A DNA stretch of 64,000 nt from Bispira polyomma (lineage: Eukaryota). The translations under genes were made by a program, and so were the position numbers. The notes below the pieces were generated by a model, which was given only the letters and a program-made list of their open reading frames with translations, ran no database searches and was not told the origin of the DNA. The stretch spans positions 7,502,001 through 7,566,000 of the forward strand of contig OZ287756.1 of NCBI GenBank assembly GCA_965649765.1. The letters run 5' to 3'. Positions 5,531 to 47,890 of this stretch are shown here, one piece after another. The stretch's first letter is position 1. Each line of letters opens with the position of its first letter.

Positions 5531-8364
5531 GTATTTGTGTTCATAATAAACACATGCAAACAATGACTCTCCAATGACCATGTTTGATCTCGACCCGACC
5601 TTTGATGGGAAGACTAGAAGTTTTTTAATGTCCTCTGTCAAGAATGTTATGTGTCTGTTTGTTTTTTGATATCAGTCAAAACTTTCATCATGACTTAGTG
5701 AATGAAAGCCATCCTTTTAAGTTATTCACTATAAGGTTAATTTCCTTTCATTTTTTCCCATATCCTTTGGACCAGGATTGCACAAAACTAGTGAACCAGC
5801 TTGCATGAAATGTGGTGGCGTGATGGGGATCATAAAATAGTCTATTTAATTTTGGAGCGAGGGAGGACGTAGAAGTTAATTTTGTGCACTGAAGTACCTG
5901 GCAGATGTTAGTACTCCACTGAGTGACCTTCTGGTTAACCATGGGATACCAGCAAAGTTATATGGTTTTAGAATAAATCATAATAATCAATATTGTATTA
6001 CGTATGCATACTTATCAGCTTCTTGTATTAATAATATTATTTCAAAATCTTTGATGTGCTTAATGCATCAGTAAAAATTGCAAAAAAAAACGTTTTTTAG
6101 GAGAAAAAGAGAAAATATGATTCATGTAAAAGCATTTAAATTAATTGACAAAAACAAGATCTCTACTATTTTGTGTTAAACATACTTGTCTGCCTTTTTA
6201 GTTTGCGTGCTGGTTCATTATGTTTATACAAAGAAATAAAGCATGCAGTATTCAATTGGATCAAAACAATGTTACAAGAATAGAGGAACAAAACAGAAAA
6301 GAGCACAGAGAGAAAGCAAGACTAGTTTATCTTTACTGTGTATACATTTTCTGAGGAACCTAATAGCATGTATATAAAAACAATATTTAAATAGGTGTAA
6401 ATATATATACATATGTAGAGTTAAACCAATGATATCACAATTTTCACTCATTGTCAAAATCGTGATATATATAAAATCTGTAAATGTGTATGCATGAACC
6501 ATTACCTTATGCAATATAAAAGCTAAGTGTAAGGTTATTTTAAAAGAAAGACAAACAATATAGAGTTGATGAGAATAGTGTGTCTATACAATATGTGGTT
6601 ATGAGACAAATGAGATTTAGGCTTGCAGAAGTAACTTCATTATACCAACATATAGCATTAAGTAAGACGAAGCGGATGGGCGAAAGAACAGAAAATTAAA
6701 TCACACAATGAATAGACATGGTTACAAGTCACTCTTCAAATAAGACAATATCATATTCCCTCAAAATACTGTTATATTCTCACAAAAAAAAACACAGAAA
6801 GTCTCCTGTGAAATGAAAGGTATTGAGTTATACCCACGTCACACACAGTCAAATCTAGATAGCAAATGATTCAATTCTCTGAGAAATCTTTTTGGTGTAG
6901 GCGACTATCCACTCAATCCATTACAATTCCTGAGCCATTGTGGTATAAACAGGAGTCTAACTGGGGACCTCATGATCACCAGACCAAGTCACTAACGCCA
7001 AGTCCAGAATCAACAACAAAAAATGGACCAGATACGGTCATGAGGGAACAAGATAATATGTTGTCGGAACCATTTGCTATCTTGATGGAACACAAAAAAT
7101 AGGATTGATATGTTTTTTACTATATCATTGGTTTAAAACCATGCATATGATTAAGTCTCATCAATAGTTCTATAGAATATTTCCCAAAAGGTGCTGTTTT
7201 ACAGTTGTTTCAAGATACAGTATATGTATCAATTTTATTAAGCAGGTATTATATAAATTGGAAATAATATTTCCTTATAATAAATTAAAATACATATGTT
7301 CGTATAATTTATTGATACGGTGAAAACCATAGTATGGGATTGTTAGATGGCTTTAAGTACTACTTCCTTCCCACTGATGTCAACTTCGCAAAGTGTCAGT
7401 ACCATAGCCAATGAGGTTTATCCGAGGCATGGTTATTGCTATTTGAACACTAATACTCTGTGCGGTCCAATCTGCAAAATGGTTGGGGCACACAATTTGC
7501 TGCTGTTCCTAAGAGAACGGATAATAGAAATAATAATAAAAGTTCTTAGAAGAGATTAACTTAGGACCAAGACAGATATGTTTCCTAGTTTTTCAAGACA
7601 TTGCAAAGAGAACAAACAACAGTGATGCGTTGATTGATTCTTAATATTAAATGTGAATTTTTTTGTAGCTCCTAATTTTAATGGTTTACCATTATGGCTG
7701 ACAAAGTGTAGAAATAAAAGCGTCCATTTTCGCTTACTTTTGCTTTAAATTTCTTTGTTTGAAAAATACAGTTTTAGTCTAGTTTCTCATAGTTGCCTGA
7801 CTTTTTGACAGTTGACTTTTCTGGCAACATAGGCTGTACATTATTTTTAGTGAAATTTATAAAAGCAACAGTTTGTGCTTGCCAATTAAACAAATGTAAA
7901 ATAGCTAGGATATATTTTATATTTTAGAAGTCAAACTTTACAGAATTAAGTGAGGAGAAAACAAAGAAAGCATTACTATTACAGGACACTCTTGTGTTTG
8001 CACTCTGTCAGAAGCCATACCTTTTTTGCACAGTTTAACTTGTTTAGTTTTTCAGTCCCACAAAGAATCCCCAAAGAGAATGGTTGACTGATGTGCTCAC
8101 GATAATGAATACCTTGGAGATAAAAGGTAGTTTGAAAAAATATTTCACTTTACCTTAAATATTTAAAGGCTTTCATTGTTCGAAACCATCAAGTGTGTGA
8201 GTATTGAACGAAATAAAGGCTTTGATATTTTGATTATGAAATAAAGCAGAACAGGATTGTTGGTTGATATTTCTGACAGAAAACCATCACCTTTCATTCG
8301 GTGGTGCCATCTTTTGTTGAAAAAAAGTCAGAGGAGTTATTTGATTAATGTACAAATTCTGGCA

Positions 8365-16243: not shown

Positions 16244-16316
16244 ATGGACTTTAAGCGCTGGATAATATGTCTGTGTACTTACTTGTCAAGGCACTGTGGC
16301 ATCACCGGAAGTACTG
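16244..16316 (+). CDS. Receptor exon 1 (MDFKRWIICLCTYLSRHCGITGST; signal-peptide-like)
   Basis: ATG in GAGGATGG context; strong donor G|GTGAGT; phase 1 fits exon 2. The hydrophobic core is short, so this is the least certain exon. Confidence 0.72.
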
Positions 16317-19300
16317 GTGAGTTGTTCTCTGTTCATGCTTTAGTGATGTCATGGTATGTACTTCAGATACAGATACATGTCTACTTTCAGGTTTTTTTTG
16401 GGTGTGTGTTATAAAGGTATTTCTGTATACAGATGAGTTAATAAATTGTATAATACAGAAATCAGAGTTGATAAAAACATTTTAAGATTATAAAGTGATC
16501 CCTGCCTAATATATAACATATTTTCGCAACTTTTAATCACAAGTTATATTATTTTTAAATTTGATCAAAGGAACATCTACACCATACAATATATATAACA
16601 TAACATTCCACAATAATACACATGTGTTTGTTATCAGTAACCACAAATAGTTGTCTTTTAACACAGACATCGGCACACAGTATGACTGACACCCTTCAGT
16701 TTCGCGGGGTCGATTGCTTCAAGTCAATCCATGAAGGCCTTACATATTATTTTCCAACAGGGGGCCGCGGTGGCCTAGTGGTTAGCAAACATTGCGCTTC
16801 ACAATCACTGGTCTCTCACCTCTGGGCGGCGTGAGTTCAAATCCCGTCGATGCCTATGTGGGAAAGGTGGTAGTTCCTTACTGTGGGCCGCGGGTTTCAG
16901 TGCAGAGCCTTGATCAAGTGTATGCAGTGTTTCCTCCGGCGTTTCCAACTACCTGTCCCAATATAACCTGAACAGGTACTAGAGTGGACATTAAATATCC
17001 AAATTTAAATTCAAATTATTTTCCAACATGGTGGCAATATCAGGCTATGTCTGATAATGGTCTAATAATATAAATCCAACACCTCTCAGTTTGGCATGAA
17101 CCATATATGAAGTATGATATGTCTCAATGGGACGTTAAGCTTTAAACATTGCTAAATAAACCTTAATTGTCACATTTGGGGTGATAGCTACACTTTAATA
17201 TTTGTTACATTTGTGGTTTATGGATTTACTACATTTGTGGTTATTACTTTTGTGGTTTCATAATTTGTTACATTTGTGGCTATAACCATTTTGAGATTAC
17301 TTCATTTGTTGTCGGACATTGCTACATATGTGGTTATTATTTTGTAGCAATCCTGGTGACAAACAATTAAGCAAACCTACAAACCAACAGATATGGTTAA
17401 AAAGAATATCTCCCTGGTAGAGGTATTTACTGGTTAAACCTTATACATACAACATACTTTCCACCGAATGTTGTAATAAGTCTAATGTATTTCTATTGTA
17501 GATGTTTCTCTGGCAAATGTGGAAGAAACAAGATCCTTTTGTGAAGGCAGTCTGGAGGATACAGCTCTGGTTTGTATAACCTTCTCAGTGAAGTGTGACA
17601 GCTTTGATGAAGAATGTATGAGAAAAATTAGACAAGATGCTGAATGGGAATCATGTCGTAGAAATAAGGTAAAGTGCACTATCTGCCATTGTCTTCTAGG
17701 AGGTAACAAGGAGCAATTGGTCTGGGTTTGAACTTTCTCATCCTCAGACCAACACCCTAACTACTGTGCTGTTATTTTTTTATTTCTACACTTCCAAATT
17801 CAACTCCCTCACAATATTGATCATGTCACTAATATAGAAACGTAGTCCTTAAACAAGGGATACATCCGGAGTGTAACCCTGAATAAGATGTAGTGTTGCG
17901 AGTAGTCTGCAACATATCAGTTTGAAAGGGTTTAATATACTTACACCAAAAACAACATTTGCTTGTTATAGGTTTGCCAAACACAGATCAAAGTAAAAAA
18001 GGGGGAAAAATTAGATCCATACAAGTCTGGCTGTGAAAAGGATTGTGAAAAAAAAGTTGACGATAACAACCCTGCTAGCTTTGACTGTACCGTGACAAAT
18101 GCACTGGCAAGGGGTGGGCAGGAAGAGTTGGAATGTTACCGCTGTGATCGAGGGCTTTCATTTACAGACCTCTGTAATGGTCTGTATATCAATACAAAAA
18201 GACGCTTGCTTATTTGTGGTCTCCCATAGTCTAGTGAGGAGCCTCAGTGTTGCAATGCAGCCCTTTCATAGCTGTCTTCTGGGTAGATCTGTTGATGTTA
18301 ATTATTTTCCATTTCATTGTTTATGCTATTTTGGATTTTGAATATTGTTTCATGTAGCGCCTTAGAGTTTAATATAATTAAAAATAAGCACTGACATTTA
18401 TTTTTGATATTGATAACAATAGCGATAACATGGTGGTTGATGAAACCGATCACCAATTTCCCTATCCCTGTTTCCTCCACTAGTGAACTGTTAAATGCGA
18501 AGTTAAATCTAAATTAACTATACCATGGCATAGTAGTGAGGGAGTTAATAGTAGGAGATAAAATCCTGGACGAGTGAATACATAACTAGTGATGTAGGAC
18601 CTGTTCCTTTTCTGAGAACATTAACCCTCGGAGATACATTCATCAATCTGTCCCTATATATGTTTTAAATTTGATGAAGAAATTTGAATTTTTATGTCAA
18701 ATATTTCTATATTTATTTTAAAAAAAGTATCCTTATTTTCTGCATAAAAGATAATCAGTATAGTAATAACAAATGCTTTTGTTGAGTAATGCTAGCTATT
18801 TTTAAATGTGTTTTTACTTTTGTCATCACATAACAGCTAACTTAAGCTTATTTACTATTTGTCATCACAAAACAGCTAACTTAAGCTTATTTACTATATT
18901 CTAAGATGTTTACTGATTCTCAAGTGTTTATTTATTACATGACATTTTTGTAAACATTTAGTATAAAGTGTGATTTAACTTTTTATCCAATTCTGTCTTG
19001 TTACTTTTCCTTTTAGGACAAACCAAGTTTTAGATCATGTCATTTGCATAACTTAATTTTCCCTGTAATGAGATAATTATATTATAAAAATATGACAATC
19101 AAGTTGTAATTAACCTTTGTAAATAAATGATTGATCTCGTTATAACAACATATACTCACAACATTTCACTTATGATTGTTCACTTCCCATTTTTCCCCCA
19201 AAATATAAATTTTAATACATTTTCATGAAAATTGCAGAAAATGTGCTTTGTTAAATTGTTTATTGGGAATGATGCGTCCCTTTGCCCTTTTATAAGCCAC

Positions 19301-22213
19301 TCTGGTATAAATATAAGGTTTATCTTCAGAAAAATTGGAGATGTTTTCTATTATTTTAATAGAAACATAAGGTTTTGGGCCCTAAAAATTCTTAACAAAC
19401 TGAGATTTAAATTTTTTTAGAACGGTGACCCCCTGTTTTTTCCTCATATTTAGTTACAGTATGTAATTTACCACAAGTACCTTTTTATAAAAAATTTTCT
19501 TCCCAAAACAGGCTTTTCCATTGAAATCAACATTTAAATAAATACCATATTCAAAGCTTTATAGGTTTCCAAAGAGCCTGGTAGTTTTTTGATATTTTTG
19601 TTCAGCACATTCTTCAAGCTTTTCATAATTTTTTTAAGGGGAAAATCTGTGGTGTAAAACAAATGTGATCAAACAACCTTAATCTTTGTATAACATCCGT
19701 CACCTTTTGCAATAGTTTGATAATTTATTTCATTACCAACTTCTACAGACTCCACAAGTGCAGCCACCACCTCCGAACAGTTTACAACTACACCAACAAA
19801 ACAGGGATCAACATTAACAGCCTCTTCTCCCACATCTTCAGTAAGTCCCCCAAAACACTCACCTACTGCATCTATAAAAGCGGGATCAACATCCAAAGAC
19901 CCACACGTCACAGATACTTACATCACTGCAACATCACTTATATCTGCTTCAGTGGGAACTGTTACCTCACAAACAACGGAGCCATCTACTTCAATCAGTA
20001 CATCTGCAGAAACTTCCACATACACCGGTGATGGTAGAGAGAGCAGTCTCCAATCAGGGGACATGGGTATAAACCTGAAGCTGGTAGTACCGGTTATAGG
20101 TAGGTATGATGCAGAGTGTTTCTTTCTAAAGGTCATTGCAGTTTGAAGTCCTAGTTTGTCACGGTGTTCCAATCAAAAATAAGACTTTCATACTGTATCA
20201 TAAATTGTGGATGGCATTCTGATGATCTAGACCGATCCAGCTTTTAGTAGAAAAATTTTGGACTTTGCAAAAAACTTTTGTTGATCTACAATGGCTGAAT
20301 CTTGTCCTTGATTTACCATTAAACATGGTACTACTACTGTTCAACCCCCTAAGTCCCTCATTCCTTATGCTACCACCATAAGTCCACCATCGCTACTCCC
20401 TTAATGATTGTCTCCAGGGTTAAAATTGGCCGTCAGCTGCACTGTAGAATTAATATTTCCTTTTTGCTTTCTTTTTGGGGTCATTATTGGGGCCAAATAT
20501 AGTCTAAGATATTGTGTGTCATATGTATTGGTTTGGTTTCTGGTTTCTTCTACCATTGAATCTGGTTGTTGTGATATGACATAAGTTATTGAAAATGATG
20601 TAAATCCCAACTAAACTCATATAAAATCAGGATTCATCTCATGAACAATTCAGTATGAAGGTGACTTGTGAGGTTGGTCTTGTGATCAGATGGTCCCCTC
20701 GGTTAGACTCCTACTAATGCTGCTATTAGGCTCATTGGTGGGATTAACATCCTTGGGCCAGATGTGAACACACCAAATGCCTAAGGATGGTGATTTAGGC
20801 TTTGTTGTTGTAGGACTATCCCTTGTGAGGAACGATTGCTGTAGAGGATGATATATCAATAGAGTGCTATACAAATGCTCCAATAATAATAATTGTACAG
20901 CTAAATGTAAGGTAAATGCTGTATAGAGTGGATACTTTTTCATATGTCTCTATGATTTTTCTGTTTGCAGTGACTTGTCTCCTGGTTGGTTCCATTATCT
21001 TGGCTATCCTGCTTATATACTGGAAAAGGTAACTAATATAAGTAGAGATTCATTGGAAAGAGTACACATATGGCATTACATTTCAAAATATTTTGACCTC
21101 AAGTTAATTTTTACAATGTCGTCAGCTCAAAACATTGATACACAACACTGCCAGAAACAGTGACAGTTTCACTTTGGAAACTCTGATATCAGTAATTGTG
21201 ACCCATATTTGTGTACTCATCAGTACAATTTGAAAATTAGTGACCATGTGAACAATATATTTGACCTAATTATTAAAAGTCTGCACTTTTTATATCTTCT
21301 GTATCTTATCAAGGAAATTTTGCCTGGTTCATTTGTTGTTTTCAGAATTACAAAATATATTAACAACTGATTTGCAAATTATTTAGTGGTCCTAGAGAGA
21401 ATACAATCAAATTTTAAGATAAAACCAGGTAGATTTAAAAAAAATGTATTACCTGGAAATATATGTTTAATTGTTAAATTTGGTACATTAAGAAGGTCAT
21501 ATATGCTTGTAAATTACAAAGACCCTATTAAGACTAAAAAATGTATATTAAATGTATAGCATATATTAATGTATACTTTATTTCTGAAATATAACTGGTA
21601 TATACTTTTTTAATGTCTCAAAAACAAATTTTATTGTTTATCTTTTTTAAAATTATATTTTAAATTTATTACAAATTTCTGCAGAGGCATGCACTATGTT
21701 ATTCTATTTGTCTTATATTTTTATGCTTCCAGAAAGAAAAAGAATGTGCAAACAAAAGATTCCCAAGCCCATCCATCTCCTGACCATAATGTTAACAGTC
21801 CCACCATTGCTAAAACAAGTGATCCAACTAACATCACAGAACAGTACGTAGGACTGGACCATTCCACTATGCATATTGACGGGCATCCACAATGTCAGCC
21901 ATATGAAACACTGCAGTCAGCGACATACGAGTCTTGTGAACCTGGTACAGAAAAAAATGGCTGTCGATTTGTACAGAACCCTGAATATGAAAGCTTTGAT
22001 GATGATGCAAAGGATACAAGTGATACCCTGTATTTTAGGGAAACTCAAGGCACTGAAGCAAAGAACTGCGGCAATTATGGAGAAATCACTGGAGGTACAC
22101 AGGACACTAACACAAGTGCTAACATTCCCAAAGACAATGTTCATGAGGAGGTGGAATATCTGGAGCTCTTGCAAGAAGATGATAAACTTACAACAACAAA
22201 ACATGGAACTTGA
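16244..22213 (+). CDS. Six-exon type I membrane receptor, 445 aa: signal peptide-like leader, 12-Cys three-finger(Ly6/uPAR)-like ectodomain, mucin stalk, TM, tyrosine-motif tail. Exons 16244-16316, 17502-17668, 17972-18179, 19749-20099, 20971-21028, 21733-22213
   Basis: All five introns are GT-AG with compatible phases (1,0,1,1,2). Exon lengths sum to 1338 nt (446 codons) with no internal stop. Domain order is coherent, and exon 2-4 splice sites recur in the paralogous copies. Confidence 0.88.
16760..17014 (+). mobile_element. tRNA-derived SINE in receptor intron 1, young insertion
   Basis: A box TGGCCTAGTGG (16771), B box GTTCAAATC (16835), perfect 14-bp TSD ATTATTTTCCAACA (16746-16759 and 17015-17028). 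Confidence 0.95.
17168..17345. repeat. Degenerate minisatellite (TACATTTGTGGTT-like)
   Basis: About 8 imperfect copies of ACATTTGTGGTT with variable spacing. Confidence 0.8.
17502..17668 (+). CDS. Receptor exon 2 (Cys-rich domain, Cys 1-5)
   Basis: ttctattgtag| ... AAG|gtaaag; reads DVSLANVEETRSFCEGSLEDTALVCITFSVKCDSFDEECMRKIRQDAEWESCRRNK. Confidence 0.9.
17972..18179 (+). CDS. Receptor exon 3 (Cys 6-12, SGC and DLCN motifs)
   Basis: cttgttatag| VCQTQIKVKKGEKLDPYKSGCEKDCEKKVDDNNPASFDCTVTNALARGGQEELECYRCDRGLSFTDLCN G|gtctgt. Paralogs have G|gtatgt at the same position. Confidence 0.9.
18818..18896. repeat. Tandem duplication, 2 x 39 bp
   Basis: TTTGTCATCACAWAACAGCTAACTTAAGCTTATTTACTA occurs twice. 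Confidence 0.9.
19174..19678. mobile_element. Kolobok-like MITE in receptor intron 3 (inverted copy of 9926-10490)
   Basis: Internal sequence is the reverse complement of 9926-10490 (CCCAAAACAGGCTTTTCCATTGAAA, AAACATAAGGTTTTGGG); ends AACAACC|TTAA. Confidence 0.8.
19749..20099 (+). CDS. Receptor exon 4 (Ser/Thr/Pro-rich mucin-like stalk and start of TM)
   Basis: cttctacag| DSTSAATTSEQFTTTPTK...GINLKLVVPVI G|gtaggt; 351 nt, open frame. Confidence 0.9.
20971..21028 (+). CDS. Receptor exon 5 (transmembrane helix)
   Basis: tttttctgtttgcag| VTCLLVGSIILAILLIYWKR |gtaact; followed after splicing by the basic stop-transfer KRKKK. Confidence 0.9.
21733..22213 (+). CDS. Receptor exon 6 (cytoplasmic tail with YVGL, YETL, YESC, NPEYESF, YFRE, YGEI, VEYLEL)
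   Basis: ttttatgcttccag| in phase 2; same frame as track ORF 21689-22213; TGA at 22211-22213. Confidence 0.9.
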
Positions 22214-24703
22214 GAGCTATTTTACATGGCATGTGGTATAGTACTTTTGTTGTTGTGTAAACATTTGAAGAGACTTGCTTCTGCTGGAATATGATTCCTG
22301 GATCTTGCAGATTTTGAGATTAAAGCTTGAGATTAAAGAGGAGACCCCGCAAACATTAGTGTTTAAGGCATTGATAGACACTACTATGATGTGTCTCTTC
22401 CACAAAAGCCTGTCCTCAGGTCTTATACTATTACATCAATATTCAACTTGCTTGGCTGAGAGATGGGGGGGGGGGGGGGGTAATGAGATCCCTGGATCTT
22501 GCTGGTCTTGAGATTAATAGTTGCTCACTTAACAGTTGAGCTAAAGGGGAGACCCTGAGTGTTTAATGCTTTGATATACCCTAATATTACAGTGACCACA
22601 TTTGGGTATATACAGTTAGAGTTTCCTCTAGATATTCGGCGATTGCCTTGAATCAGAGATTCTGGTTTGACATATGAAGACCATTTTTTTTACATATATA
22701 TTTATATAGTTATTTCTTTGTTCTATTGCAATACCTGGAATAGACAAATATGAATTTGAATTTAAAATTGCATGGTACAGTGGAATCTTTATTATATAAA
22801 CAATTTGCGAGAGCCAGACTATTTTCACATAAAATAATGATCATAAAATAGAATAGGCATTATATTACAAAACAAAAGGAAACATAAATGTGGGAGTTAA
22901 AAAAATCAAGTCTTCGGACAAGTTTGTATAATAGAGGTTCTACTGTACATATCTAGTTTTCAAATTGAAAGCTATGTTATACTTTTGCCTTATGTTTATC
23001 TGTGATGTATGTAACTATTTAAGCATAATATACGTTTCCTATATCAATAAAAAATTGTCTCATTGCTATAGCATCATTATCCATATAATATAAAGGAGTG
23101 TTGTCTTACTGCATGTGGTCACTTTTATATGAAGACTGATAATAACTTTTATTTAGTTTGGCTTTGACTAGTAAAGCTGAAACCTTTTCAGTAGTTTCTG
23201 ATATAGTTTAGATATTAGTTTAGTTAGTTTATCATCGCTTACAACATATGTTGTGTGATTTTACGACTTGCAGTTCACTAATGAAGAAATGACAGGGCAG
23301 TTGGTCAATGTTTTCAGCTCTAAGCAAACCATCTGCATTTACCAAGTGTACGTGCCAGGACTGAGAAATTCAAACCCATGGCAGCAGGTGGTGAAGGTGA
23401 GTGTAATATTTCTACTGCAACACTAAGGCCCCAGCTGTTGATACAAAATTAAGACCTCCTTACATGTGTTCATAGTTTTTTTTAATTCTTTTATTGGTAA
23501 AGATGTCATTTTAAAATAGAATAGGGCCTTGCTCAGTATATTCAGGCATTCAGACAGTTGAACCCTTTTGCCACCAATTAAGTGGCACTCCACAAAAAAC
23601 GAATACATTTATTTGGCAAAATGTCTCCACTTGTCCAGATAAGTTATACAGATGGAAAAGATGGAAATCAACTATTACTGGCAATAAGGTACAGTACTGG
23701 TACGGAAATACTCGTAAACAGTTAAAAACACACAACTACTGGGGAAAGATAAGATCCAGTAATGTTTTGGCAATACTCAAAAATGAGCCAAAGGATTTTT
23801 CTGCATTTTTCCGTCTCGACAAGGCAGAACTTTTGCCCCTACCCTCGAACCGCCGACAAGGTTTTGGAAGGAAGCTGAAGTTATGGGAAGTTCGAAATAG
23901 GTTTCCCCACATTACAAAGCAGTTTTCAAAACGTCTCTTACTGCCTCTACAGTTATAGTGTGAACCCCAAATAAAAGAAACTTTTATTGATTTGATACAT
24001 GATACATATTTTTTACAGTAAAATCATGTTATGTAACCAAACCTAATGAATCCTATGTATGCTAGAATTTTCTGAAAAAAAAAATGAAATTAAAGATAGA
24101 AAATATCTAGAATGGTCCCATATATAAATATGATTTCCGAATGACTACATTATAATTATGGTTGTGGCTTTGAGCTGAAAGAGTACCTAGTACAACTGTA
24201 CATTCTTGTGTTGAAATGTGGTATAAGCCATTATGTAAAAATTGAATTGTAAAAACAATGGTACAATTAGATTTGTACAGTTAACACATTGTATTATGTA
24301 ACCTGTAAAAATATATTATTATTTCGTTAATGTTAAGAAGTATAAACACAATTAAATAATAACCTTTTTCACCATAGATAGTTATCACAGTTGTGAATGT
24401 TACCAGCCATCAGTGTTATAAATGGTATATCAATCATATGTATTTTGGCACACAAGTCCTATGGGCAGGGAGTTACTGTAATAATAACAATCTTTATTCT
24501 CATGTACCTGAAACATGATACAGAAAGGTTATACCATCAAAGATGTAACTTTTTATATTTATGTTTGATAAACTATATTTAAACTAATCTTCTACAATGG
24601 ATCTATCGTTACACTGGAGTCCGGGTTCGATACCCAAATACACATTAAAATCTTTGCAAGATGACGACTAAATTTTACATAATTTTTACATTACATGTGC
24701 AGT

Positions 24704-24759: not shown

Positions 24760-24990
24760 ATTAAAAGTACAATATATTTACCATTTGGTGAAAATTACCA
24801 GTTGGGTCAAGATTCAATATTAGTTTTAAATCTTAGTGTCAAGTCATGTAAACACATGACCGATTAGTCTGATACAACAGGTGCATAGTTATTATAATAT
24901 GAAGTATACCACAGTATAGTAGTCACATTTCATTGTTAATATGTCCACTGGATTAACTCATCTAATCTGAGCTTAGTTCATACAAAAAAA

Positions 24991-25670
24991 AAAGTCAGGA
25001 CTTGCATTAATCAAAACACACATTTTATTATAATTAATTAGTATTCAATCCACCAAAAAAAAGTTGGTAAAACAACAAAGTTACCATATTTTTGACAAAC
25101 TGGGCGTAGGATTTACTCATTGTTTGAAAGGCTTTTAATGTGGAGATTTAACCCCGTACACACTTGCATTAAACAGTACAGACAAAAATAGCAAAACCAC
25201 CATAAAGTATACAACACACTTATTCTCCTATAACCTAAATGTGCATCTTGTAAACAGTTTTAATAACTAGTCTCACCTTGTACAAACACAGTAACCACAT
25301 AATCCAGTCTTGTCGTGCAACATAATTAGCAAAGTCAGGACTTGCATTAATCAAAACACACATTTTATTATAATTAATTAGTATTCAATCCACCAAAAAA
25401 AAGTTGGTAAAACAACAAAGTTACCATATTTATTGACAAACTGGGCGTAGGATTTACTCATTCTTTGAAAGGCTTTAATGTGGAGATTTAACCCCGCACA
25501 CACTTGTATTAAACAGTACTGACAAAAATAGCAAAACCACCATAAAGTATACAACACACTTATTATCCTATAACCTAAATGTGCAGTCTTGTAACTAGTT
25601 TTAATGACTAGTCTCACCTTGTACAAACACAGTAACCACATAATCCAGTCTTGTCGTGCAACATAATTAG
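24991..25670. repeat. Recent tandem duplication, 2 x ~340 bp, in the GPCR pseudogene 3' flank
   Basis: AAAGTCAGGACTTGCATTAATC...CAACATAATTAGC at 24991-25330 and 25331-25670; single copy in the paralog at ~60654-61003. Confidence 0.95.
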
Positions 25671-25710
25671 CACAGTTCCTTTAACTTATGACTTTACTGA
25701 AAGTTACATG

Positions 25711-26658
25711 TTACCGGCATAATTGTGGGATATAGTTTTTGAGTTCTTTCTTGAAACATATTAATTATTATGAGTAATGTTATTGCTGGTAAGTAGAAGC
25801 AGACAAAGCAGAAGCATACAATGAACATTGTGACCAAGATATTAAGACTGCCTTTTGGAGAACCCTCCATTGGATGAGTCAGCTGAAAGTGGTGCTACTT
25901 TATGTTTATTTCTTAGTGTCAGAAAGATATTGGTGTAGACAAATAACATGAAACAAATAGGAAATAGTCATAAATAGACTAAAGGCAAAGATGATCTCGT
26001 GTAGGTCACTCCTCTAGAAGTACATGACTTTGCAAATGTCCTCTTGCATTCTGGACATACTGATCAAAAATATGCCAAAGAGGAGTGCAAACACAAAGAT
26101 GGCTAGTATCCCAATGCAGGCCAGTTTCTTATTCAAGTAGTTTTTATGCAGCACTGGCTTATCAACCATGAAGTATCTCTCTAAGGTAATCAGCAAACTG
26201 TTGTAGGTAGAGGCCATCAGGAATGTCTAATGCGGAAACTGTGACACCAAGATTCTGCAAATGATCTCGCTGTTGACAGCTAGGACATGCTGCAAGGTGC
26301 AAATGATGAGGAACAGCCCGCACAGACAATCAAACATAGACTAACTTTTGATGAAGATGTTGGTCAACTCTTGATTCATGGTTTTGCTCCTTGTCAAGAC
26401 AATCAAGACAAAGAGGATGCTAAAGGAAATGAAGAGACCAGTTGGGTAGTTGATGACAGAAATATCAATATCCCATTTTGTTCAACTTGGTAAAGGATCA
26501 TTCATTGCAGTTGTATTGCTGTCGGCAGCATTTGTAATGTTGGTAGCATCATCTGTGATAGTGACAGCCATCATCTGAGTACTCAAATACACAGTTAGGT
26601 TGATAATAGATTGAGTACATGATGACTTAGTAACTGTTGTTTGCTTTGCCATGTTCAT
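25711..26658 (-). pseudogene. Orphan class A GPCR pseudogene 1
   Basis: Colinear with 61043-62104. Stops at ~26482, ~26228 and ~26014; deletion in TM5; the TM7 NPxxY segment is deleted. LITLERYF is retained. Confidence 0.93.
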
Positions 26659-27189
26659 TTCTACTGAGCTGAACCCAATAGAATTTGCCCTTGTGATGCA
26701 AAATGCCCTTATGATGCAAAATGGAGCAATAATAACGGTGCTGGTTTTTAATTCCATGGCAGAAACAAAAAAAAAATGAGCAATGGCTGCATGGATTAAA
26801 GATATTAAGTGTTACTAATCCTAGGTCCATCAATAACCAGTATGTCAAGTAGAAGTTCATGTTTCCCACTGGTATGGAACTGGCTTCCGATAATGTCAAT
26901 TGCATCTAGGAGACTAATTATACATTAGTCTTTGTTACTTATAGAAAGGCCGGTACAATGTTCAATAGTCAACCTTTTTGTTTTCATTTTAATTCTTTTC
27001 AGCAGAAAAGAAAACATAAAGCTGGTTAATTGCATGCAATCACAAAATTATCCACATGCTGGAAATTTCTCTGCAATTAGATAATTATACTCAGTCTGAC
27101 AATTGCTTTACAAGTATGTCTACTTACAGCATATGCATTAGTAGAGGATAAAAGGTTTTATCTGACTGAGTGGGTGTGTGGGGGGCAAA

Positions 27190-27550: not shown

Positions 27551-30500
27551 AGTTACCGTGTAATCCTGGTGACAAACAATTAAACCAACATAAAGAGACA
27601 AAAACAATATCCCCCAGAAGAGGTATTTACTGGTATATGCTCGTTAGACCTTTTACAAACAAATTATTTGTCACTGCATGTTGAAATAAGGCTAATCATG
27701 TGTTGTATTCCTTTATAGATGTTGCTCTGGCAGATGTGAAAAAACGGGCATTTTGTGAAGGGAATTTGTTTGACCTTCTCAGTAAAGTGTGATAATTTTG
27801 ATGACAAATGTATGATTGAAATTAAGGAGAAGAATGGAGTGTGTGTTTCAGAAGTGAGGTAAATGGTAAAGAGCACTTAGTACATCACAAATTGAGAATA
27901 ATAATTGAGAATTTAGTTTGGTATGACATCGCTTATGACAAGTTAGGTCAAATCACGACAGTCAGAATTTTTATGACGATAAAAACCTCCCACCTTTGGC
28001 GTAGTGAAAGAACAAACATGATTGAAACCCACAATGGTGAAAGGCCAGTCATTGTGAAGCAATCACATCAAACCCCTTGGGCCACAGCGGCCCCTGGAAT
28101 CACATTTGAATGAAAATGCAAAAAAAATTTGAGGTAGTATAATTTCAAATTTTTAACAGTCTAGTAAACATGCATATCGAAGTAATCATTCATGTATATA
28201 TATTTATTATATGTTTTGCCATAATTTGTTAGCCAATCAGAATCAATGACACAGGGTTATCATGTCTGAATACATCTTACACACATGACAAATGGTCAAG
28301 TTTGTTTCACTTTCTTTCAAAACTTATTAACCCTTTCGCAGCTGGTGCAACAATATTGCCCCATACTTTTACTGGGTGACAGATATCAGCACACCACTGA
28401 CTACTCCAGGAATTATATAAAACCCTTTTCTTTTATTCCTTACAAACATAGAATTCAGCAGTACTAACACACAAATGCACAGTCCTAAAATAATGCATGG
28501 TAATGGTCATAGTACCATTGTATGCTTTTATTATTAACTCTCTCACAATGTGGACTCAAAATGATTTATTAGTCATTTCAGTTATCTAGAAAAATCGTAG
28601 TCCTCAGACAAGCGGGCATTGTCAGGAATTAGAGTGAAACCTCAAATAAGTTGTGGTGTTGATTCATCAGAAATACATTAGTATGAAAGTAAATAAGAAA
28701 GAAATAAATCCTTACCAGTCAGGCTGTAAAGATGGTTGTGAAGAAGAGGTTGAGGACCACCACGTTGATGGCTTTAAATGTACAGTGGTTAATACAAGGG
28801 GTGGGCAGGAAGACTTTGAATGTTACCACTGTGGTCGAGGGCTTTTCATTTACAGACAGCTGTAATGGTATGTTTTTTATACTGTTGAAGACTGATTTAT
28901 TTGTACGTCTTCCATCACCTAATGCAGGGTCTCAGTGATGCATTGAGGGATCAACATTAACAGACATTTCTGTTACACCTTCAGCGATTCCCTCAAAAGA
29001 CACACAAACAACATCTATAAAATATAGATCTACATCCAAATATTCTTCAACCACAATTCCATCTTTTTCAACTCAAACCAAGTATCACATGTCACAGACA
29101 CCTTCATCTCAACTCCATTGTTTATATCTGCTACAGTGGGAACTCTTAGCTCACACACGTCAGAGCTATTTACTTCATTAAGTACATTTGCAGAAACTTC
29201 CACAGACACCAGTGATGGTAAAGACAACGGGATCCAATCAGGGGACACAGGTACAAACCTGAAGCTGGTGATACCAATTATAGGTTGGTGTGATCTAGAA
29301 GGTCCTTCAATCATGGTTTGAAATTATAGTTTATCACGGTATTTAAATGTTAAACAATGTAAATAACCCTTTGTGGTTGTGTCGAGTACTGCGGATAATA
29401 TAAAACCAATCCGGCTTTCATGGGAAAATCTTCGGTTTGGTTAAAACTGCTGTGGATATATTGCCATTGAATCTTGTCTGTGATTAACCATGATACCATC
29501 CGACCCCTAATTCCTCATTCTACCACCTTTTGTCCCTATAGTACCACCGTAAGTTCATCTTGACTAACCCTTGTTAACCTTCGCGAAAAGCTGTGCCTAT
29601 ATTCCATAAAAGCTGTAATTTTCCCTCATCACTTAAAACTCAATAACTCCCCCCAATGACACAGAACCATGATGATTTACTTCACCGTGGTCAAATGGGA
29701 CAGGCCTGGATTACCTTAAAAATTGACAGTCAACATTAACACTTATGATACCAAAATAAAACTATCAAAGGCAAGTGAAGGGAAATTTTTAGTAATAGCT
29801 TACAGATAGCTTGAGTCACTAAAGTATACCCCAACTGCTTTTGGCATTCAACAATGGCATTCAATAATGGACTAATTTTTTCAACAAAGAATTCTGCTGG
29901 GCTAACATTTCCTATTCGGAGAAACTGATGGAAAATTAAATTATAATTGTGTATTGTTGAATGCTTGCCAACAAACATGAGAGTCAGAATGGTTAATATT
30001 GGCCTTTGTTTTATTATCGAAGTCATTATTGAGGCAAAATATCTTGTAAGATTTTGTGTTCGTATGTATGTGTGTCCCTATATGTTATACTTACACCCAA
30101 ATACATGTTCTTTATATTAAATGTTACGTAATTGTACGTAGTTTGGTTATTGATCCCTGTTGTATATTCTACATTTACTTGCATCAAGAGGATGTTTTTG
30201 TGTGATTTTAGGCCACTGGTTTTCAGGAATTTTTAGGAATTATCTCTCTCCCCAATGTGGTTTTGAATGATTTATTTTTGTGTTCCTTTATGTGAGAAAG
30301 CATACCGTAAGTCTGTGGTTTACAGTGCTTAGTGTGCTGATTTCTTCCACCATTGAATATGACCGTCATGATATTACCTGAATTGTGGAAAATCACACGA
30401 AACCATAACTAAATTCATCCAAATTCATGATCTATATCATGAACAATTCAATACAAGAGGGTCTTTCACTAGTAAGACACTTTAGGGCACTACTTCTTTT

Positions 30501-30739
30501 GTCCTCATAGCAAACGTTATACCTCTACCTTAAATGTGTGAATTACACATAGCTATGCTTAGCAAATTTGTCTGACCATCCATAGACTGACTAATTAGAT
30601 TATTCCACCTGTAGCTTAATTCCCGCTTTTTGAGGGACCCCATATTGAATTTTCTACTGACATGGAAGCAACAGAAAATATTTTAAGCAAGCAAATAAAC
30701 ATTTTCATATAGTTTTTAGTCAACATTTTTAGTTTTTAT

Positions 30740-32280
30740 ACGTTTTTTTTGTGTTTATTATGTGTTGTTGACTGCTTGCAAGGATTTGTACTGCGTTCAA
30801 TATGAGACGAGCAACAAAGAAAACGCCGTCAGGTACACAATTAAAGAAATCAGCATGCCAAGGCAAAGCGACAGGGAAGATGGGATACAGGGGTCAACTG
30901 GTAAACACTTTATCTCCCAATTTACAGAGTATTCTGACGGAGGCCGTCGGTAACTACAGCAGTTCTACTCTTGTTGAACCTCATAACGTTTCCATTCTTG
31001 TCAGCACCATCGCTAGTCCACCACCTTCCTCTAAATCACCCCCATCGGGAGGAGCTACATCAGACAAAAAGTTGAATATATTAGGAGGTCTGGAATCTTC
31101 CAACACTGCCTTCTCACAGAGATTGGACAGAGTTCAGTCAGGCTTGTTCAACCAGCATGTTTGGGTGCAACCTCAGGGCCTGTCGGCCATGCAGGGACCG
31201 AGTATAGCTACAAACCCATTCCCGGTACACAATTTCACAAATGTTTAACAACAGCTACTGAACACAGCTTATGTCAACATGGCGACACAGCCACACGTTA
31301 TTCAGGTTATCCCTTCAGGAATTTGCTAGAGGCAGAATTGTGCCCAATCTGGATGCGCTAAGAACCATGCTATCAGTACAGGCAGCTGTAACACATCAAC
31401 TAACTCAGTATGAAATGGCAGCCATTAGGGAACTGAAACAAGGTAAGAGCCTTAAATCTGGTAGATTCAATAGTACTGACATTACTACTACTGATGCAAA
31501 GCATAGATGGCCTAACGAGGGCTAGGTCAGCGGAGCCACAAGCAAGCGACCTGCCTATGACAACTTATCACTGCCAAAATGGGCAGCAGGTCAGCTATCA
31601 AACACCTTACTTGTCACCGACGTCAATGAGATGCGCAGTATAATGTAACCACTTGTTCATGCCTTCCGAGATGCATCCTCGCTACCATGGCCCGTCGTTC
31701 GTGCCGCGTGGGCGTTAAACATAAAGGAAATAGAGGAGGGCAGACTGGCCTGCACATATAATACGCAGTGGGCTACTGACAGGCTCAATGCATCTCAACT
31801 TGCCATGGCAAACAGCCACCCATGGGGAAATGGCAATCTTACTAGTAACAGCACCACATGAGAGGGGAAGACAATTTGCAAACATTTTAACAGTGGAAAG
31901 TGTACATAAAAAACTGATCATGGCATTTACAAACACAATTGTTGGCACTGTGCCAAGGTTGTGGGAAAGGAATCAAGTCATCCAGAGTTTAAGTACTTTA
32001 AGGCCAATGCCAGTAAGATTGAGAATAATACCAATACTAAATAGGTAGCTTACGGACAATGTAAAATTGAGAACAATAACAGTGTTTTAAGTGTCAATGT
32101 AAATAATGAAAACGATTAGGATATTCGGGACGAAAAGTGTAGTTTCTTAAATGAGTGCATAGTAAATGTTGAAGGTTACAAAAATGTTACAAACAGTATA
32201 AATAATATGCCTTCTGTCATTACAGAACCAGAATTTTTAGGTTGCAAAATGACCAACACCAAAAGGTTGGTTATCTCTTC
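30740..32280 (+). mobile_element. DIRS/Ngaro-like retroelement 5' part (gag), decayed
   Basis: Fragments LKSGRFN, WPNEG, YDNLSLPKWAAGQL, DASSLPWPVVRAAWA and a C-terminal CKHFNSGKC..H...H.C..C zinc-finger-like motif; in-frame stops. Confidence 0.75.
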
Positions 32281-35200
32281 CCCGAAGAGAGATGAAGGGC
32301 AGAAAATTCACCTCACAAGCTCCAGCCTAGCAAAACAACGGTAACACAAAGCGTACATAATCCTGATATAGATAGAGGGCATGTTATTGTAGGTAGCACT
32401 GACCAGTTCTTCAAGCAGGATGAGTTCTGATAAATAAAAAAAAAATAACCCCTATGACCCAGACACTATTTTGTATTGTGTATAAAGAAAACTATAGAAT
32501 AATTACCCATAGAAACATTGCCAATGTCACTTTGGAAACTGTGACCCACATCGGTGTTCTCATCTGTACATTTTCAAAAATAATGACACTGTTTATTTAT
32601 AGTCTGCACTTTTTATATCTTCCATATCTATTACCTCCTTCGAGGAGTTTTGCCTTTTTCTGATGGTTGGTTTGTTTGTCTTCAGAATTCAAATGATATA
32701 ACTGATTTGCAAAATATTTGGTGTAGCATGAAATAATAAAATAACATGTGGAGACAAAACTATACATAGACAAAACTATATTAGATTAGCCATGAAAAAT
32801 AATTTAATTGTTTAAAGAAGCTCATAAATGATTGTAAAATAAATACAACAATGAACACTACTGGAAGGACTGAAAGGTGTATCTTAAAGGTATAGCAGAT
32901 ATTAATGTATACTTTAGTTCTGAACTATAACTGTTTTACTTTTTATATAACACTGTCTCAAATACAACTTTTGATATTTCTCTTTTTCAAAATTTTATTT
33001 AAAATATTAAAGACAAGAAGACAATAAGTGAGAGGAAATTACAACAACGGAACATGGATCTTGCTGGTCTTGAGATTAATAGTCACTTGCTTAACAGTTG
33101 AGCTAAAAGGGAGAAGCTGAGTGTTTAATGCTTTGATATACCCCTATATTACAGTGACCACATTTAGGTATACAGTGAAAGTTTTCCCCTGGACATATAT
33201 TTATTAGGGATTGCCTTGAATCAGAGATTTTGCTTTGACATATGTAGACATATATAGACCATTTTGCATTAAGCATTTACAATGTACATATATATTTATG
33301 TAATTATTTCTCTATCCTATCTCAACACCTGGAAAGGACTAATACAAATTAGATTTTAAACTAGCATGGTGCAGTAGAACCTTTATTATCCAAATATCTT
33401 GGGAGAGCCAGATTCTGTTTAGATATTATAATTGTCATAAAACAGAAGAGACATTTCAGTAAAAAGCAATAGAAAAACATAAATGTGGGAGTTGTCAGAA
33501 TTTTAGTCTGGAACTTAGACTGCCTGTCTCTTCAAGCAATGGCGAGTAATATCTTTAACCCCTTCTGGAAGGAAGTTTTCATATCCTGGTCAAAGTATAA
33601 GACAACATTTACTAAGCAAATCGATATTAGAACCTATCCTATATGGAATAGTCACTTTTTAACAAATAGAAATCTTTTACAGCATAAAACGTTTTTCACT
33701 GAGAAAGGCCTAACATCATAAATGATCTGTTAGATGAACAAGGGTTATTGTATGGTTACGACAGTTTTGTCATATCCTTCAAGTTGCCTTAACTTGTGTT
33801 GATTATTTTAGCTTGATCTATTCTGTTCCTTAGGAGTGAAGAAATATTATTGCCACAGAAAAGAGAAAGCTTAAGTTAAGTGAACTAGAACAGAAATCAT
33901 TAGTCAATGTTAAAAATATGAAGAAGGAATGCCAAGGAACTTATTGGATATTTGTGAATTTGACATCTGGATTAAATAATTTTATTTATATCAGCCCAAA
34001 TTCAGGAATATTTATAAACAAAGATAAAAACACGAGATGTGGATTGAAATGGCCAGTTTATTCAACTGACAAAAATGTATATATTAAAGCAAGCATACAA
34101 CATCTTTAAAATTTGATTACATCACACAAGTGACTTATATATACATTATTTATTTACATAAATGTGGTGAGGGACACAAACCCAAAATACCGCAGGTCTC
34201 CCTCACCCCACACAGAAAAAGGAAGGGAAAAAGAAGACACATATTGACATTATTATGGTTGGAATCCTAATGTATTCTCCAATGCATCAGATTTTCAAAC
34301 TCCACTAACGTTATTTCAGAAGCAGAGAGGCCTACTTTGGCCAAGTGGGTAAGGAATGGCTATTAATGCTTAATGGGCATTGGATGTAAATGTACAATCT
34401 AGAAATGTTTCTATCCGGATCATGGATCTGTATAAATTTGACAAAAATAAAACAGTATAAGCATCCACACAAAGGATGGATCCAGATAAAAAAATACATG
34501 ATTTCTCCCAATAGGAAGAATATATACAGTTTTATAAGGTATTGTCTCATTTGATTTAGTGATATCTTTAGATATACAACAAAATAACAATTCAGTTTTT
34601 TTTTCAATAATAATGACACTTATATTTTATCACTGATCAAACAGATGTTAAATGCGCCTTACATCAGATTATAATCCCCATTACTAACAAGAATATAATG
34701 CATTTCTAAAACACACAGAGTGAAAAATGTAATAAAATTCCCATTTTTTAACATTCTGTAACAAATTTGGGAAGATTTTCTGGTGAGTGTGAGATTTTCT
34801 GGTGAGTGTGAGTATAAACAATATCCGATTTGGAAGAAGTACACTGATCTGAATCCCGATCCAGATCAATCACAGTGTGAATCCACCTTAAGCTGGAAAC
34901 TGTGCAATTGTTGTGTTATATGAGATGGGGAACTCCGTAGTAAATTCAATGCAGTGGAGCTGCTTCCCAGAGAAGGATGGAGGAGGGAAGTACAGCACTC
35001 TCCAGAGGCTTGCCAGGGAGCAAGGTGTCAAGCTGGGAAAGTGTAATAAAAATCAAACCTATTAAATTTGGCAAGAGGCATATATAATATTGGTATCCAC
35101 CAGTACTGCGTGCCCACCAATAATAAATGAAAAACCTGTCTGGAAACCGTCTTTTAAGAACTGGAGGTCACTGGACTTGTAATGACTAGTAACTGTTCAG

Positions 35201-44000: not shown

Positions 44001-44001
44001 A

Positions 44002-45356: not shown

Positions 45357-47890
45357 TGGATTAAAGATATTAAGTCTTGTTATTCTTAGGTCCATCAATT
45401 ACCAGTCTGTCAAGTAGAAGTTTGTGCTTCCCATTGGTATGGAACTGGCTTCCAATGATGCCAATTACTTTTAGTAGGGGACTAATTATCCATTAGTCTT
45501 CATTACTAATAGGGAGGCCGGTTCAAAGTTTGTTGTCAACTATGGTTTGATTTAATTTTAATTCTTTTCAGCAGAAAAGAAAACATGAAGCTAGTTTTGT
45601 AGAATAACAGTGAAAGATAAAATAGCTGAGTTAATATATTCAAATTAGCCTCATCATGTAGCTGATATTTACTGTCAAATACACTTCACTAATAGTCATT
45701 GTTTAAACTTTATAACTAAAGGTTTAGCTTTTCCTATTAACTTAAATTGCATGCAATCACAAAATTATCCACATTCTGGAAATTATGTCTCACTACAGTG
45801 TATGCATTAGTAGAGGACTTGATTGATTAGTAGAGATTTGATCTGACTGTGGAGGGGGGGGGGGCTAAGCAAGTATGATGAAATGAGATGGGATTTATGT
45901 TTCCTCCTAAACCCAGAAAACATTTCTAGTGATCTAAGCTCAACTGGGAGACTATTTCATAACATAGGGGCAGCCATAGAGAAAGCTCTAGATCCAAGAT
46001 CCAGCCCTCTTAGCAGGTTTTACAGAGGAAACAGAAAGTATTTTCCCTCTGTTTTGTGACGGGCATTTTGTAGTTTGCCATCAAAAATGATTAACAGCAC
46101 AAACCTACACCAAGGTGCGAAAGGTTCCATCAATTGTGTAATGCCTACCAGCTTCCTTCCATTCAGGTCAACTCAAAATTTAATGAATTCATCCTTGGAA
46201 TAAACTGCATCCTCCAACAAATTTGTTATAAATATGTTATGTAGTTTCCGTGTAATCCTGGTAACAAACAATTAAACCAAAAAAAGAGACAAAAACAATA
46301 TGCCCCAGAGTAGGTATTTACTGGTATATTTTCGTTAGACCTTATACAAACAAAATATTTGTCAGTACAATTTGAATTTGTTTGACCTTCTAAGTAAAGT
46401 GTGATCATTTTGATGACAAATGTATGATTGAAATGGAGTGTCTGAATGGAGTGTGTGTTCCAGAAATGAGGAAAATGGACTACACGAGCACTTAGTACAT
46501 CACAAATTGAGAATAATAAATGAGAATTTAGTTTGGTATGATGTCGCTTTTGACAGGTTAGGTCAAATCACATTGGTGAAAGGCCAGTCATTGTGAAGCA
46601 ATCACTTTTAACCCCTAGGGCCACAGCGGCCCCTGGAGTCACATACGAATGAAAATATGAAAAAATCATTTGAGGTAGTATAAATTCAAATTTTTAACAG
46701 TCTAGTAAACATGCATATCGAAGTAATTATTTATGTATATATATGTTTTATATTTATTATATGTTTTGCCATAATTTGTTAGCCAATCAGAATCAATGAC
46801 ACGGGGTTATCATGCCAGAATGCATCTTACACACATAACAAATGATCAAGTTTGTTTCACTTCCTTTCACAACTTATTAACCCTTTCATAGCTGGGGCAA
46901 CAATATTGCACCATACTGAAGGAAATTCCCTAGGTAACAAATAATAGCACACTACCTACAACTCCAGGAATTATATAACACCCTTTTCTTTTATTCCTTA
47001 CAAACATAGAATTCAGCAGTACCAACACAGAAATGCACCATTGTATGGTTTTATTATTTGCTGTAACACTCTCACAATGTGGACTCAAAGTGATATTGAT
47101 GGCTTTAACTATACAGTGCTTAATGCAAGGGGTGGGCAGAAATACTTTGAATGTTACCGCTGTGATTGGGGGCTTGCATTTATAGGCCGCTGTAATGGTA
47201 TGTATATTAGTACAGATGAAGGCTGACTTATTTGTACGTCTCCCATTACCTAATGCAGGGTCTCAGTAATGCATTGAGGGATCAACATTAAATGTTAGAC
47301 AATGTAAATAACCCTTTTTGGCTGTGTCGAGATCCGTGGATAATATAAGACCAATCCGGCATTCATGAGGAAAATCTTGGGTTTGGTTAAAACTGCTGTG
47401 GATATATTGCCATTGAATCTTGTCTGTGATTAACCATGATACCATCTAACCCCTAATTCCTCATTCTTCCACCTTTTGTCCCCATGGTACCACCATAAGT
47501 TCACCCTCACTAACCCTTGTTAACCCTTACAAAAAGCTGTACCTCTATTCCACAAAAGCTGTAAATTCCCCTCATCACTTAAAACTCAATAACTCCCCCC
47601 ACAATGGCACAGAACCATGATGATTTTCAGCATGGCTCTCGCCAGTTTACTTCACCGTGGTCATATGGGACAGGCCTGGATTACCTTGAAAATTGACCAT
47701 CAACATTAACACTTCTGATACCAAGATAAAACTAAATAAATAAAAGTACACCCCAACTACTTTTGGCATTCAATAATGGCATTCAATAATGGACTAATTT
47801 TTTCAACAGAGAATTCTGCTGGGCTAATATTTCCTATTGGGAGAAACTGATGGAAAATTAAATAATAATTTTGTATTGTTGAATGCTTGT
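45357..47890. repeat. Segmental duplicate of ~26790-29970 (GPCR upstream block + L2 fragment + receptor remnant)
   Basis: Long near-identical colinear blocks, e.g. CATGGATTAAAGATATTAAGT, CACAAATTGAGAATAATA, GGGACAGGCCTGGATTACCTT. Confidence 0.93.
46250..47890 (+). pseudogene. Receptor pseudogene copy 3 (exon 2 remnant ~46372-46470; exon 3 remnant ~47090-47197)
   Basis: DGFNYTVLNARGGQKYFECYRCDWGLAFIGRCN G|gtatgt. Exon 4 is deleted at a TTAA microhomology; truncated by the Gypsy remnant. Confidence 0.85.

What the first reader, a model, noticed from the sequence alone, without database searches (positions are those of the whole stretch)
16244..22213. Hidden six-exon receptor: three-finger-like Cys domain on a mucin stalk, wired to a kinase-less NPxY/ITIM tail
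Seen: six phase-compatible GT-AG exons give an uninterrupted 445-aa protein that the ORF track does not assemble. It has a 12-Cys ectodomain with SGC and terminal CYRC...DLCN, ~110 aa of Ser/Thr stalk, TM LVVPVIVTCLLVGSIILAILLIYW, KRKKK, and a 159-aa tail. Known: a GC dipeptide and terminal DxCN typify three-finger (Ly6/uPAR, activin-receptor ectodomain) folds; these are usually secreted, GPI-anchored, or linked to a Ser/Thr kinase. Inference: a three-finger-like domain joined to a phosphotyrosine docking tail is an architecture I do not recognise. It resembles the logic of immune/allorecognition receptors and is the best candidate for an undescribed system in this window.
Basis: partly seen in the sequence, partly recalled or inferred. 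Interest (0 to 1): 0.9.

Follow-up and report, generated by a model that had tools for sequence, protein, structure and literature searches.

The report
Worm receptor with orphan cysteine module
A marine worm gene encodes a cell-surface protein whose outer tip is an unclassified 12-cysteine module, also used five times in a chitin-binding surface protein, and whose inner tail carries tyrosine docking signals; it probably binds a matrix or protein partner and is internalised or signals through adaptors, but no expression, ligand or fold is shown.

Summary
The six-exon, 445-aa model is correct (exon 4 starts at 19749). The host is an annelid by mitochondrial gene order. The 12-Cys head is a real module: five more copies, with all 12 cysteines and the same 1-0-1 exon phases, are tandem repeats in a predicted GPI-anchored chitin-binding (CBM_14)/TSP1 mosaic gene on contig C14, under purifying selection. 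No relative was found outside this genome. The three-finger claim is unproven: core cysteine spacing fits, but both end signatures differ, 'DLCN' is absent from three of six copies, and no Pfam, profile or fold test was significant (only exon halves could be folded). The tail is enriched in YxxΦ motifs (5 of 7 Tyr, P=0.0007); the single ITIM is chance-level. An immune/allorecognition role is poorly supported: one intact gene, two decayed neighbours, no positive selection. Best reading: a lineage-specific adhesion/uptake receptor built by exon shuffling. The scan already noted the same head-stalk-TM-tyrosine-tail layout, with other heads, elsewhere in this genome. No RNA evidence could be obtained.

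The parts
16244..16316 (+). Exon 1: start codon and probable (weak) signal peptide, aa 1-25, phase-1 donor
   Evidence: donor rank 3/438; only such ATG exon in 2-17.5 kb
17502..17668 (+). Exon 2: first half of the 12-Cys module (5 Cys, invariant W-x2-C), phase 1-0
   Evidence: five Cys, Val and Trp invariant in six copies
17972..18179 (+). Exon 3: second half of the module (7 Cys, C-Y-R-C-x9-C-N), phase 0-1; weak donor GTCTGT
19749..20099 (+). Exon 4: Ser/Thr stalk (46% S+T) and start of the TM helix; in-frame alternative acceptor 19842 and donor 20027 possible
   Evidence: homologous 3' half in copy 2 at 60% identity
20971..21028 (+). Exon 5: rest of TM helix (to W284) and start of basic stop-transfer run
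21733..22213 (+). Exon 6: 159-aa acidic cytoplasmic tail, 7 Tyr, five YxxΦ; no catalytic domain; stop at 22211-22213
21977..21988 (+). NPxY motif (NPEY, aa 368-371), overlapping YxxΦ YESF
   Evidence: shuffle P=0.03
22151..22168 (+). ITIM-consensus VEYLEL (aa 426-431)
   Evidence: shuffle P=0.13
22319..22337 (+). Two ATTAAA hexamers, candidate polyadenylation signals
   Evidence: untested
27562..33493 (+). Decayed tandem copy 2: no exon 1 found, frameshifts in exons 2, 3 and 4, exon 5 and most of exon 6 deleted
46374..47437 (+). Decayed copy 3: fragments of exons 2 (in-frame stop, 4-nt deletion) and 3

Best explanation
A lineage-specific annelid type I membrane receptor made by exon shuffling. 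Shown: a 12-Cys, acidic extracellular module flanked by phase-1 introns sits on a Ser/Thr stalk, one TM helix and a catalytically empty tail rich in YxxΦ motifs; the same module is repeated five times in a separate gene predicted to encode a GPI-anchored chitin-binding mosaic protein. Inferred: the O-glycosylated stalk lifts the module above the glycocalyx, where it binds a protein of the apical matrix (cuticle, chaetal, tube or gut-lining matrix), the setting implied by the C14 protein; the tail then couples to clathrin adaptors (YxxΦ to AP-2 mu2, NPxY to PTB proteins such as Dab/Numb) and, after Src-family phosphorylation, to SH2 proteins. It therefore works as an adhesion/uptake receptor with adaptor signalling. 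The module is more likely than not (about 0.55-0.6) a highly diverged three-finger domain with an extra disulfide.
For: Intact frame and splice sites. Module conserved in six copies with identical Cys count and near-identical spacing, dN/dS 0.25-0.55 between intact copies. C14 gene carries CBM_14 exons (E=5e-7), a TSP1-like exon and a terminal hydrophobic GPI-type exon. YxxΦ enrichment P=0.0007. For three-finger ancestry: C-x5-C-x17/18-C-x3/5-C core matches the worm's ordinary LU domains (x5-7, x12-18); exon-3 model has the two-hairpin strand order and its top Foldseek hit of 350,542 chains is a BMP-receptor ectodomain chain (7ppc_J, E=2.0, TM 0.43); a sixth C14 domain with a canonical C-x2-C-x8-C start shares RV-x-C, W-x2-C, the same phase-0 intron, x18/x5 spacing and YRC.
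Against: No transcript, ligand, tissue or localisation data. Exon-3 donor and exon-4 acceptor are weak, and dN/dS against the decayed copy is 0.98 for exon 3 and 0.81 for exon 4, so recent decay of this copy is not excluded. The tail has no homologue, so motif conservation could not be tested. All fold and profile tests are non-significant. Chitin association belongs to the other gene, not to this one.
Confidence: 0.5

Rival explanations
1. Immune or allorecognition receptor: the module senses microbes or non-self and the ITIM/NPxY tail delivers an inhibitory or activating signal, like Hydractinia Alr or Botryllus fester receptors.
For: ITIM-consensus VEYLEL and several YE-type tyrosines; local birth-and-death duplication; no relatives outside this genome; exon-3 loops differ strongly from copy 2.
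Against: One intact receptor gene in the genome; no dN/dS above 1; ITIM at chance level, no ITSM; allorecognition systems described in PMC12582321 and bioRxiv 10.1101/2022.03.04.482883 are polymorphic multigene families. Genome search scores only top candidates, so distant paralogues may be missed.
Confidence: 0.2
2. BAMBI-like decoy or co-receptor: a three-finger ectodomain that binds a TGF-beta/BMP ligand or receptor and modulates or clears it.
For: Kinase-less single-pass layout; best, non-significant, Foldseek hit is a BMP-receptor ectodomain; endocytic motifs would suit ligand clearance.
Against: The worm has a separate BAMBI-like gene (L034, Pfam BAMBI E=5e-7); no Activin_recp or BAMBI match for the module; long mucin stalk is unlike TGF-beta receptors (own knowledge); tandem use in a chitin-binding mosaic.
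Confidence: 0.08
3. The gene is a recently inactivated or partly mis-spliced relic, like its two neighbours, or makes mainly a secreted module by read-through of the weak exon-3 donor.
For: Weak exon-3 donor and exon-4 acceptor, marginal signal peptide; neighbours are pseudogenes; dN/dS near 1 in exon 3 versus copy 2.
Against: 445 codons without stop or frameshift while both copies, about 20-25% diverged, carry several lesions; all 12 Cys kept; tail motif enrichment; exon 2 dN/dS 0.24.
Confidence: 0.12
4. The 12-Cys module is not three-finger at all but an undescribed alpha/beta disulfide fold (this rival concerns the fold and is compatible with the functions above).
For: First two spacings are x6-7 and x5-7 after an extra Cys rather than C-x1/2-C; end is C-x2-C-x8/9-C rather than CC- or CxC-x4-CN; a helix is predicted where finger 1 should return; about 111-125 aa against 60-90 for LU domains (PMC13719153); intron falls before, not after, the fifth core Cys, unlike ordinary LU exons here; all tests negative.
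Against: Core spacing, beta-hairpin pattern, and the bridging sixth C14 domain.
Confidence: 0.4

Closest known systems
Ly6/uPAR (three-finger, LU) proteins with a C-terminal TM helix or Ser/Thr stalk (Pfam clan CL0117; e.g. LYPD3/C4.4A from own knowledge)
   Same: Small disulfide-rich surface module on a membrane anchor; core C-x5-C-x18-C-x3-C spacing; terminal CN in this copy. LU+TM proteins occur across metazoans, about 54 LU genes per annelid genome (PMC13719153).
   Different: 12 Cys with non-canonical spacing at both ends, larger size, no HMM match, different intron position; a long tyrosine-motif tail is not described for LU proteins in the survey or in my paper searches.
BAMBI (three-finger ectodomain, TM, kinase-less tail)
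   Same: Single-pass, no kinase.
   Different: No BAMBI/Activin_recp match; the worm has its own BAMBI-like gene (L034); mucin stalk and multi-tyrosine tail here.
Invertebrate ITIM/ITAM-tailed receptors (Hydractinia Alr, Botryllus fester family)
   Same: Lineage-specific ectodomain, TM and non-catalytic tyrosine tail.
   Different: Those are polymorphic multigene families with Ig, sushi or EGF domains; this is one intact gene with no sign of diversifying selection.
Head-mucin stalk-TM-tyrosine tail receptors (CD34/podocalyxin, TIM, LDLR-type NPxY tails from own knowledge; CBM14-headed versions noted elsewhere in this genome)
   Same: Overall layout and tail logic.
   Different: The head is the unclassified 12-Cys module.
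Insect Retroactive (Rtv)
   Same: Three-finger protein tied to chitin matrix organisation (PMC3561106), as the C14 context suggests for this module.
   Different: Rtv is a 15-kDa, 10-Cys protein with a hydrophobic C-terminus and no tail; no sequence similarity detected.

Membership tests
Three-finger / Ly6-uPAR superfamily | Match to a CL0117 profile (UPAR_LY6, Toxin_TOLIP, QVR, Activin_recp, BAMBI, CD59) | tested here: not met
   No hit at E up to 10 for 13 exon pieces; genome scans with three of these profiles do not list the module. Single exons of ordinary worm LU genes do hit at 1e-4 to 1e-7 (controls were picked by those profiles). Only exon halves were tested.
Three-finger / Ly6-uPAR superfamily | N-terminal C-x1/2-C start | tested here: not met
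   Spacing is x9-14, x6-7, x5-7 in all six copies against x1-2 in the worm's LU domains.
Three-finger / Ly6-uPAR superfamily | Core C-x5/6-C-x~15-20-C-x3/5-C | tested here: met
   x5, x17-18, x3-5 in all six copies; x5-7 and x12-18 in worm LU domains.
Three-finger / Ly6-uPAR superfamily | C-terminal CC- or CxC-x4-CN | tested here: not met
   C-x2-C-x8/9-C; Asn follows in only 3 of 6 copies.
Three-finger / Ly6-uPAR superfamily | Three beta-hairpin fingers from a disulfide core (3D fold) | tested here: inconclusive
TGF-beta family receptor / BAMBI | Activin_recp or BAMBI ectodomain; Ser/Thr kinase for true receptors | tested here: not met
   No profile match; exon 6 ends in a stop with no kinase.
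ITIM-bearing inhibitory receptors | [SIVL]xYxx[ILV] in the tail | tested here: met
   One, VEYLEL; expected 0.13 by shuffle, P=0.13; no second ITIM or ITSM.
ITIM-bearing inhibitory receptors | Phospho-dependent recruitment of SHP/SHIP phosphatases | not testable with these tools
   Needs biochemistry.
Invertebrate allorecognition receptors | Multigene expansion and diversifying selection | tested here: not met
   One intact gene plus two decayed copies; dN/dS 0.24-0.98.
Invertebrate allorecognition receptors | Extreme allelic polymorphism and allele-specific binding | not testable with these tools
   One assembly, no reads.
Endocytic receptors with NPxY/YxxΦ tails | Sorting motifs in an unstructured tail | tested here: met
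   NPEY and five YxxΦ, enrichment P=0.0007; function untested.

The most novel reading that the evidence does not exclude
An undescribed 12-Cys extracellular module (either a new disulfide fold or the most diverged three-finger branch) is a mobile exon cassette used both as the sole head of a phosphotyrosine-signalling receptor and as a five-fold repeat in a GPI-anchored chitin-binding protein, the two forming a matrix-sensing receptor/partner pair in tube-dwelling annelids.
Probability: 0.15. Interest if true: 0.65.

Novelty: new variant of a known kind. Interest (0 to 1): 0.4.

Why it matters
The module has no detectable relative among 1.84 billion protein representatives, Pfam, PDB sequences or the ESM Atlas, yet is conserved and shuffled between two very different surface proteins. 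It is a clean, small target for defining a new extracellular domain family. If three-finger, it shows that profile-based surveys of LU proteins miss diverged annelid branches and adds two architectures not listed in the 2026 survey (LU plus tyrosine tail; LU repeats plus CBM14). It does not, on present evidence, reveal a new immune system: the layout is common in this genome.

Tried and rejected
Representatives search with exon 3 gave three repeat artefacts (CBM14, cadherin and Cna_B repeat proteins), rejected. No hits: homologue searches with the exon-3 alignment and the tail, metagenome contigs, ESM Atlas twice, PDB sequences (RNase A and ferredoxin-like hits are chance). Profile comparisons with the worm's LU exons and with the sixth C14 domain were non-significant. 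The two halves of the module are not internal repeats. The C14 hits, first taken for paralogous receptors, are repeats in one gene. GPCR search to name the host failed. No extra upstream modules found on C9.

Full report
Observation. The model assembles as described, with exon 4 starting at 19749: six exons, phases 1-0-1-1-2, all GT-AG, 445 codons without a stop. Twelve cysteines lie in aa 38-148, the next 109 residues are 46% Ser/Thr, one TM helix spans about aa 261-284, KRKKK follows, and exon 6 encodes a 159-aa tail. A splice matrix trained on another gene ranks most sites near the top of the region and finds exon 1 as the only plausible signal-peptide exon in 15 kb upstream. Three soft spots remain: the exon-3 donor GTCTGT (paralogous copies have GTATGT), the exon-4 acceptor (in-frame alternative at 19842) and a short signal-peptide core.

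Host. The genome is 1.04 Gb. Its mitochondrion uses the invertebrate code and keeps the blocks atp6-R-H-nad5-F-nad4L-nad4 and cox1-cox2-atp8-Y-cox3, which from my own knowledge are annelid blocks.

The head is a real, mobile module. Exon-wise genome searches found two neighbours in the window and five copies on contig C14. The neighbours are pseudogenes: copy 2 lacks exon 1, has frameshifts in exons 2-4 and has lost exon 5 and most of exon 6; copy 3 is a fragment with a stop. The C14 copies are tandem repeats in one gene, separated by Glu-Pro-Pro-Thr linker exons and followed by CBM_14 chitin-binding exons (E about 5e-7), an acidic repeat exon, a TSP1-like exon, one more Cys domain and a terminal hydrophobic exon of GPI-signal type. 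This C14 model is my own exon reading and its first exon is not fixed. All six intact copies have 12 cysteines with spacing x9-14, x6-7, x5-7, x12-18, x5, x17-18, x3-5, x9-18, x14-22, x2, x8-9, an invariant Trp three residues before the fifth Cys, 20-27% acidic residues, and the same 1-0-1 exon phases. dN/dS between intact copies is 0.25-0.55. Phase-1 flanks make it a classic shuffling cassette (established knowledge). Nothing related was found outside this genome; these searches used exon halves and have length or word limits, so absence is not proven.

Is it three-finger? For: the core x5, x17-18, x3-5 spacing agrees with ordinary LU domains of this worm; the exon-3 model shows two hairpins in the expected order and its best Foldseek match among 350,542 chains is a BMP-receptor ectodomain chain, though at E=2.0; the last Cys domain of the C14 protein starts with a canonical C-x2-C-x8-C yet shares RV-x-C, W-x2-C, the phase-0 intron between the fourth and fifth core cysteines, x18/x5 spacing and YRC with the module, which looks like a bridge (hhalign E=0.008, probability 5%; shuffle P=0.045). 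Both models have pLDDT near 50, so the structural tests carry little weight. The joined domain was not searched or folded. I put a diverged three-finger origin at 0.55-0.6 and do not file it as a member.

The tail. It is single-copy and has no homologue. Five of seven tyrosines have a bulky hydrophobic residue at +3 (0.95 expected, P=0.0007), one is in NPEY (P=0.03), one fits the ITIM consensus (P=0.13), none is an ITSM. These tests were chosen after seeing the sequence; only the first is strong. YxxΦ is both the AP-2 sorting signal and the commonest SH2 site, and NPxY binds PTB adaptors (established knowledge), so the tail supports 'adaptor-coupled receptor' but does not single out immunity.

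How it most likely works. Shown: anatomy, module conservation, motif enrichment, sharing of the module with a chitin-binding surface mosaic. Inferred: the glycosylated stalk presents the module at a distance; the module binds a matrix or surface protein in the chitin-containing apical compartment where the C14 protein would act; the tail drives clathrin uptake and, when phosphorylated, recruits SH2/PTB adaptors (0.5). Insect Retroactive gives a precedent for a three-finger protein in chitin matrix organisation (PMC3561106). Rivals: immune or allorecognition receptor (0.2; lacks expansion and positive selection, unlike Alr and fester families), BAMBI-like decoy (0.08; the worm has a separate BAMBI-like gene), recently dead or mainly secreted form (0.12).

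Comparison and novelty. LU proteins with a TM helix are common, and BAMBI is kinase-less, so the broad architecture is not new; the 2026 invertebrate survey (PMC13719153) lists neither LU with a tyrosine tail nor LU with CBM14 among its named architectures, and my paper searches found no description. Earlier notes of this scan report the same head-stalk-TM-tyrosine-tail layout with CBM14, lectin or Ig heads in this genome, in expanded clusters; I did not check them, but they make the layout ordinary here. What is new is the head module and its reuse. Verdict: real gene, new variant of a known kind, interest 0.4.

Noticed in passing
G000:C14:10813300-10849711 minus (L011-L013, L015): Predicted GPI-anchored mosaic gene: five 12-Cys modules with EPPT linkers, two CBM_14 exons, a 360-aa acidic repeat exon, TSP1-like exon, an LU-like domain, hydrophobic C-terminus. 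One repeat appears to use a GC donor; first exon not fixed.
   Followed up: partly
window 61043-62104, 55640-56791, 24763-26894 (minus): One intact single-exon class A GPCR with no close database relative and two decayed copies; their upstream DNA is fused to the 5' ends of receptor copies 2 and 3, so both genes were duplicated together.
   Followed up: partly
window 42291-44880 (minus): Tyrosine-recombinase (DIRS-type) retrotransposon with RT, RNase H-like and integrase frames.
   Followed up: no
window 7382-7517 (+): U4 spliceosomal RNA gene, 70 bits, full length.
   Followed up: no
G000:C4:31883184-31928398 (L040-L048): Tandem array of at least nine near-identical single-exon Quiver-type LU genes with GPI-like ends.
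   Followed up: no
L034 (G000:C12:45386755-45386994): BAMBI-like ectodomain exon (Pfam BAMBI E=5e-7).
   Followed up: partly
G000:C75 (L023-L024): 15.5-kb mitochondrial genome with protein genes on both strands (cox1, cox2, atp8, cox3, nad3 inverted), unusual for annelids from my own knowledge.
   Followed up: partly
window 18180-18229: Read-through of the weak exon-3 donor would end the protein 16 residues after the module, giving a secreted form; untested.
   Followed up: no
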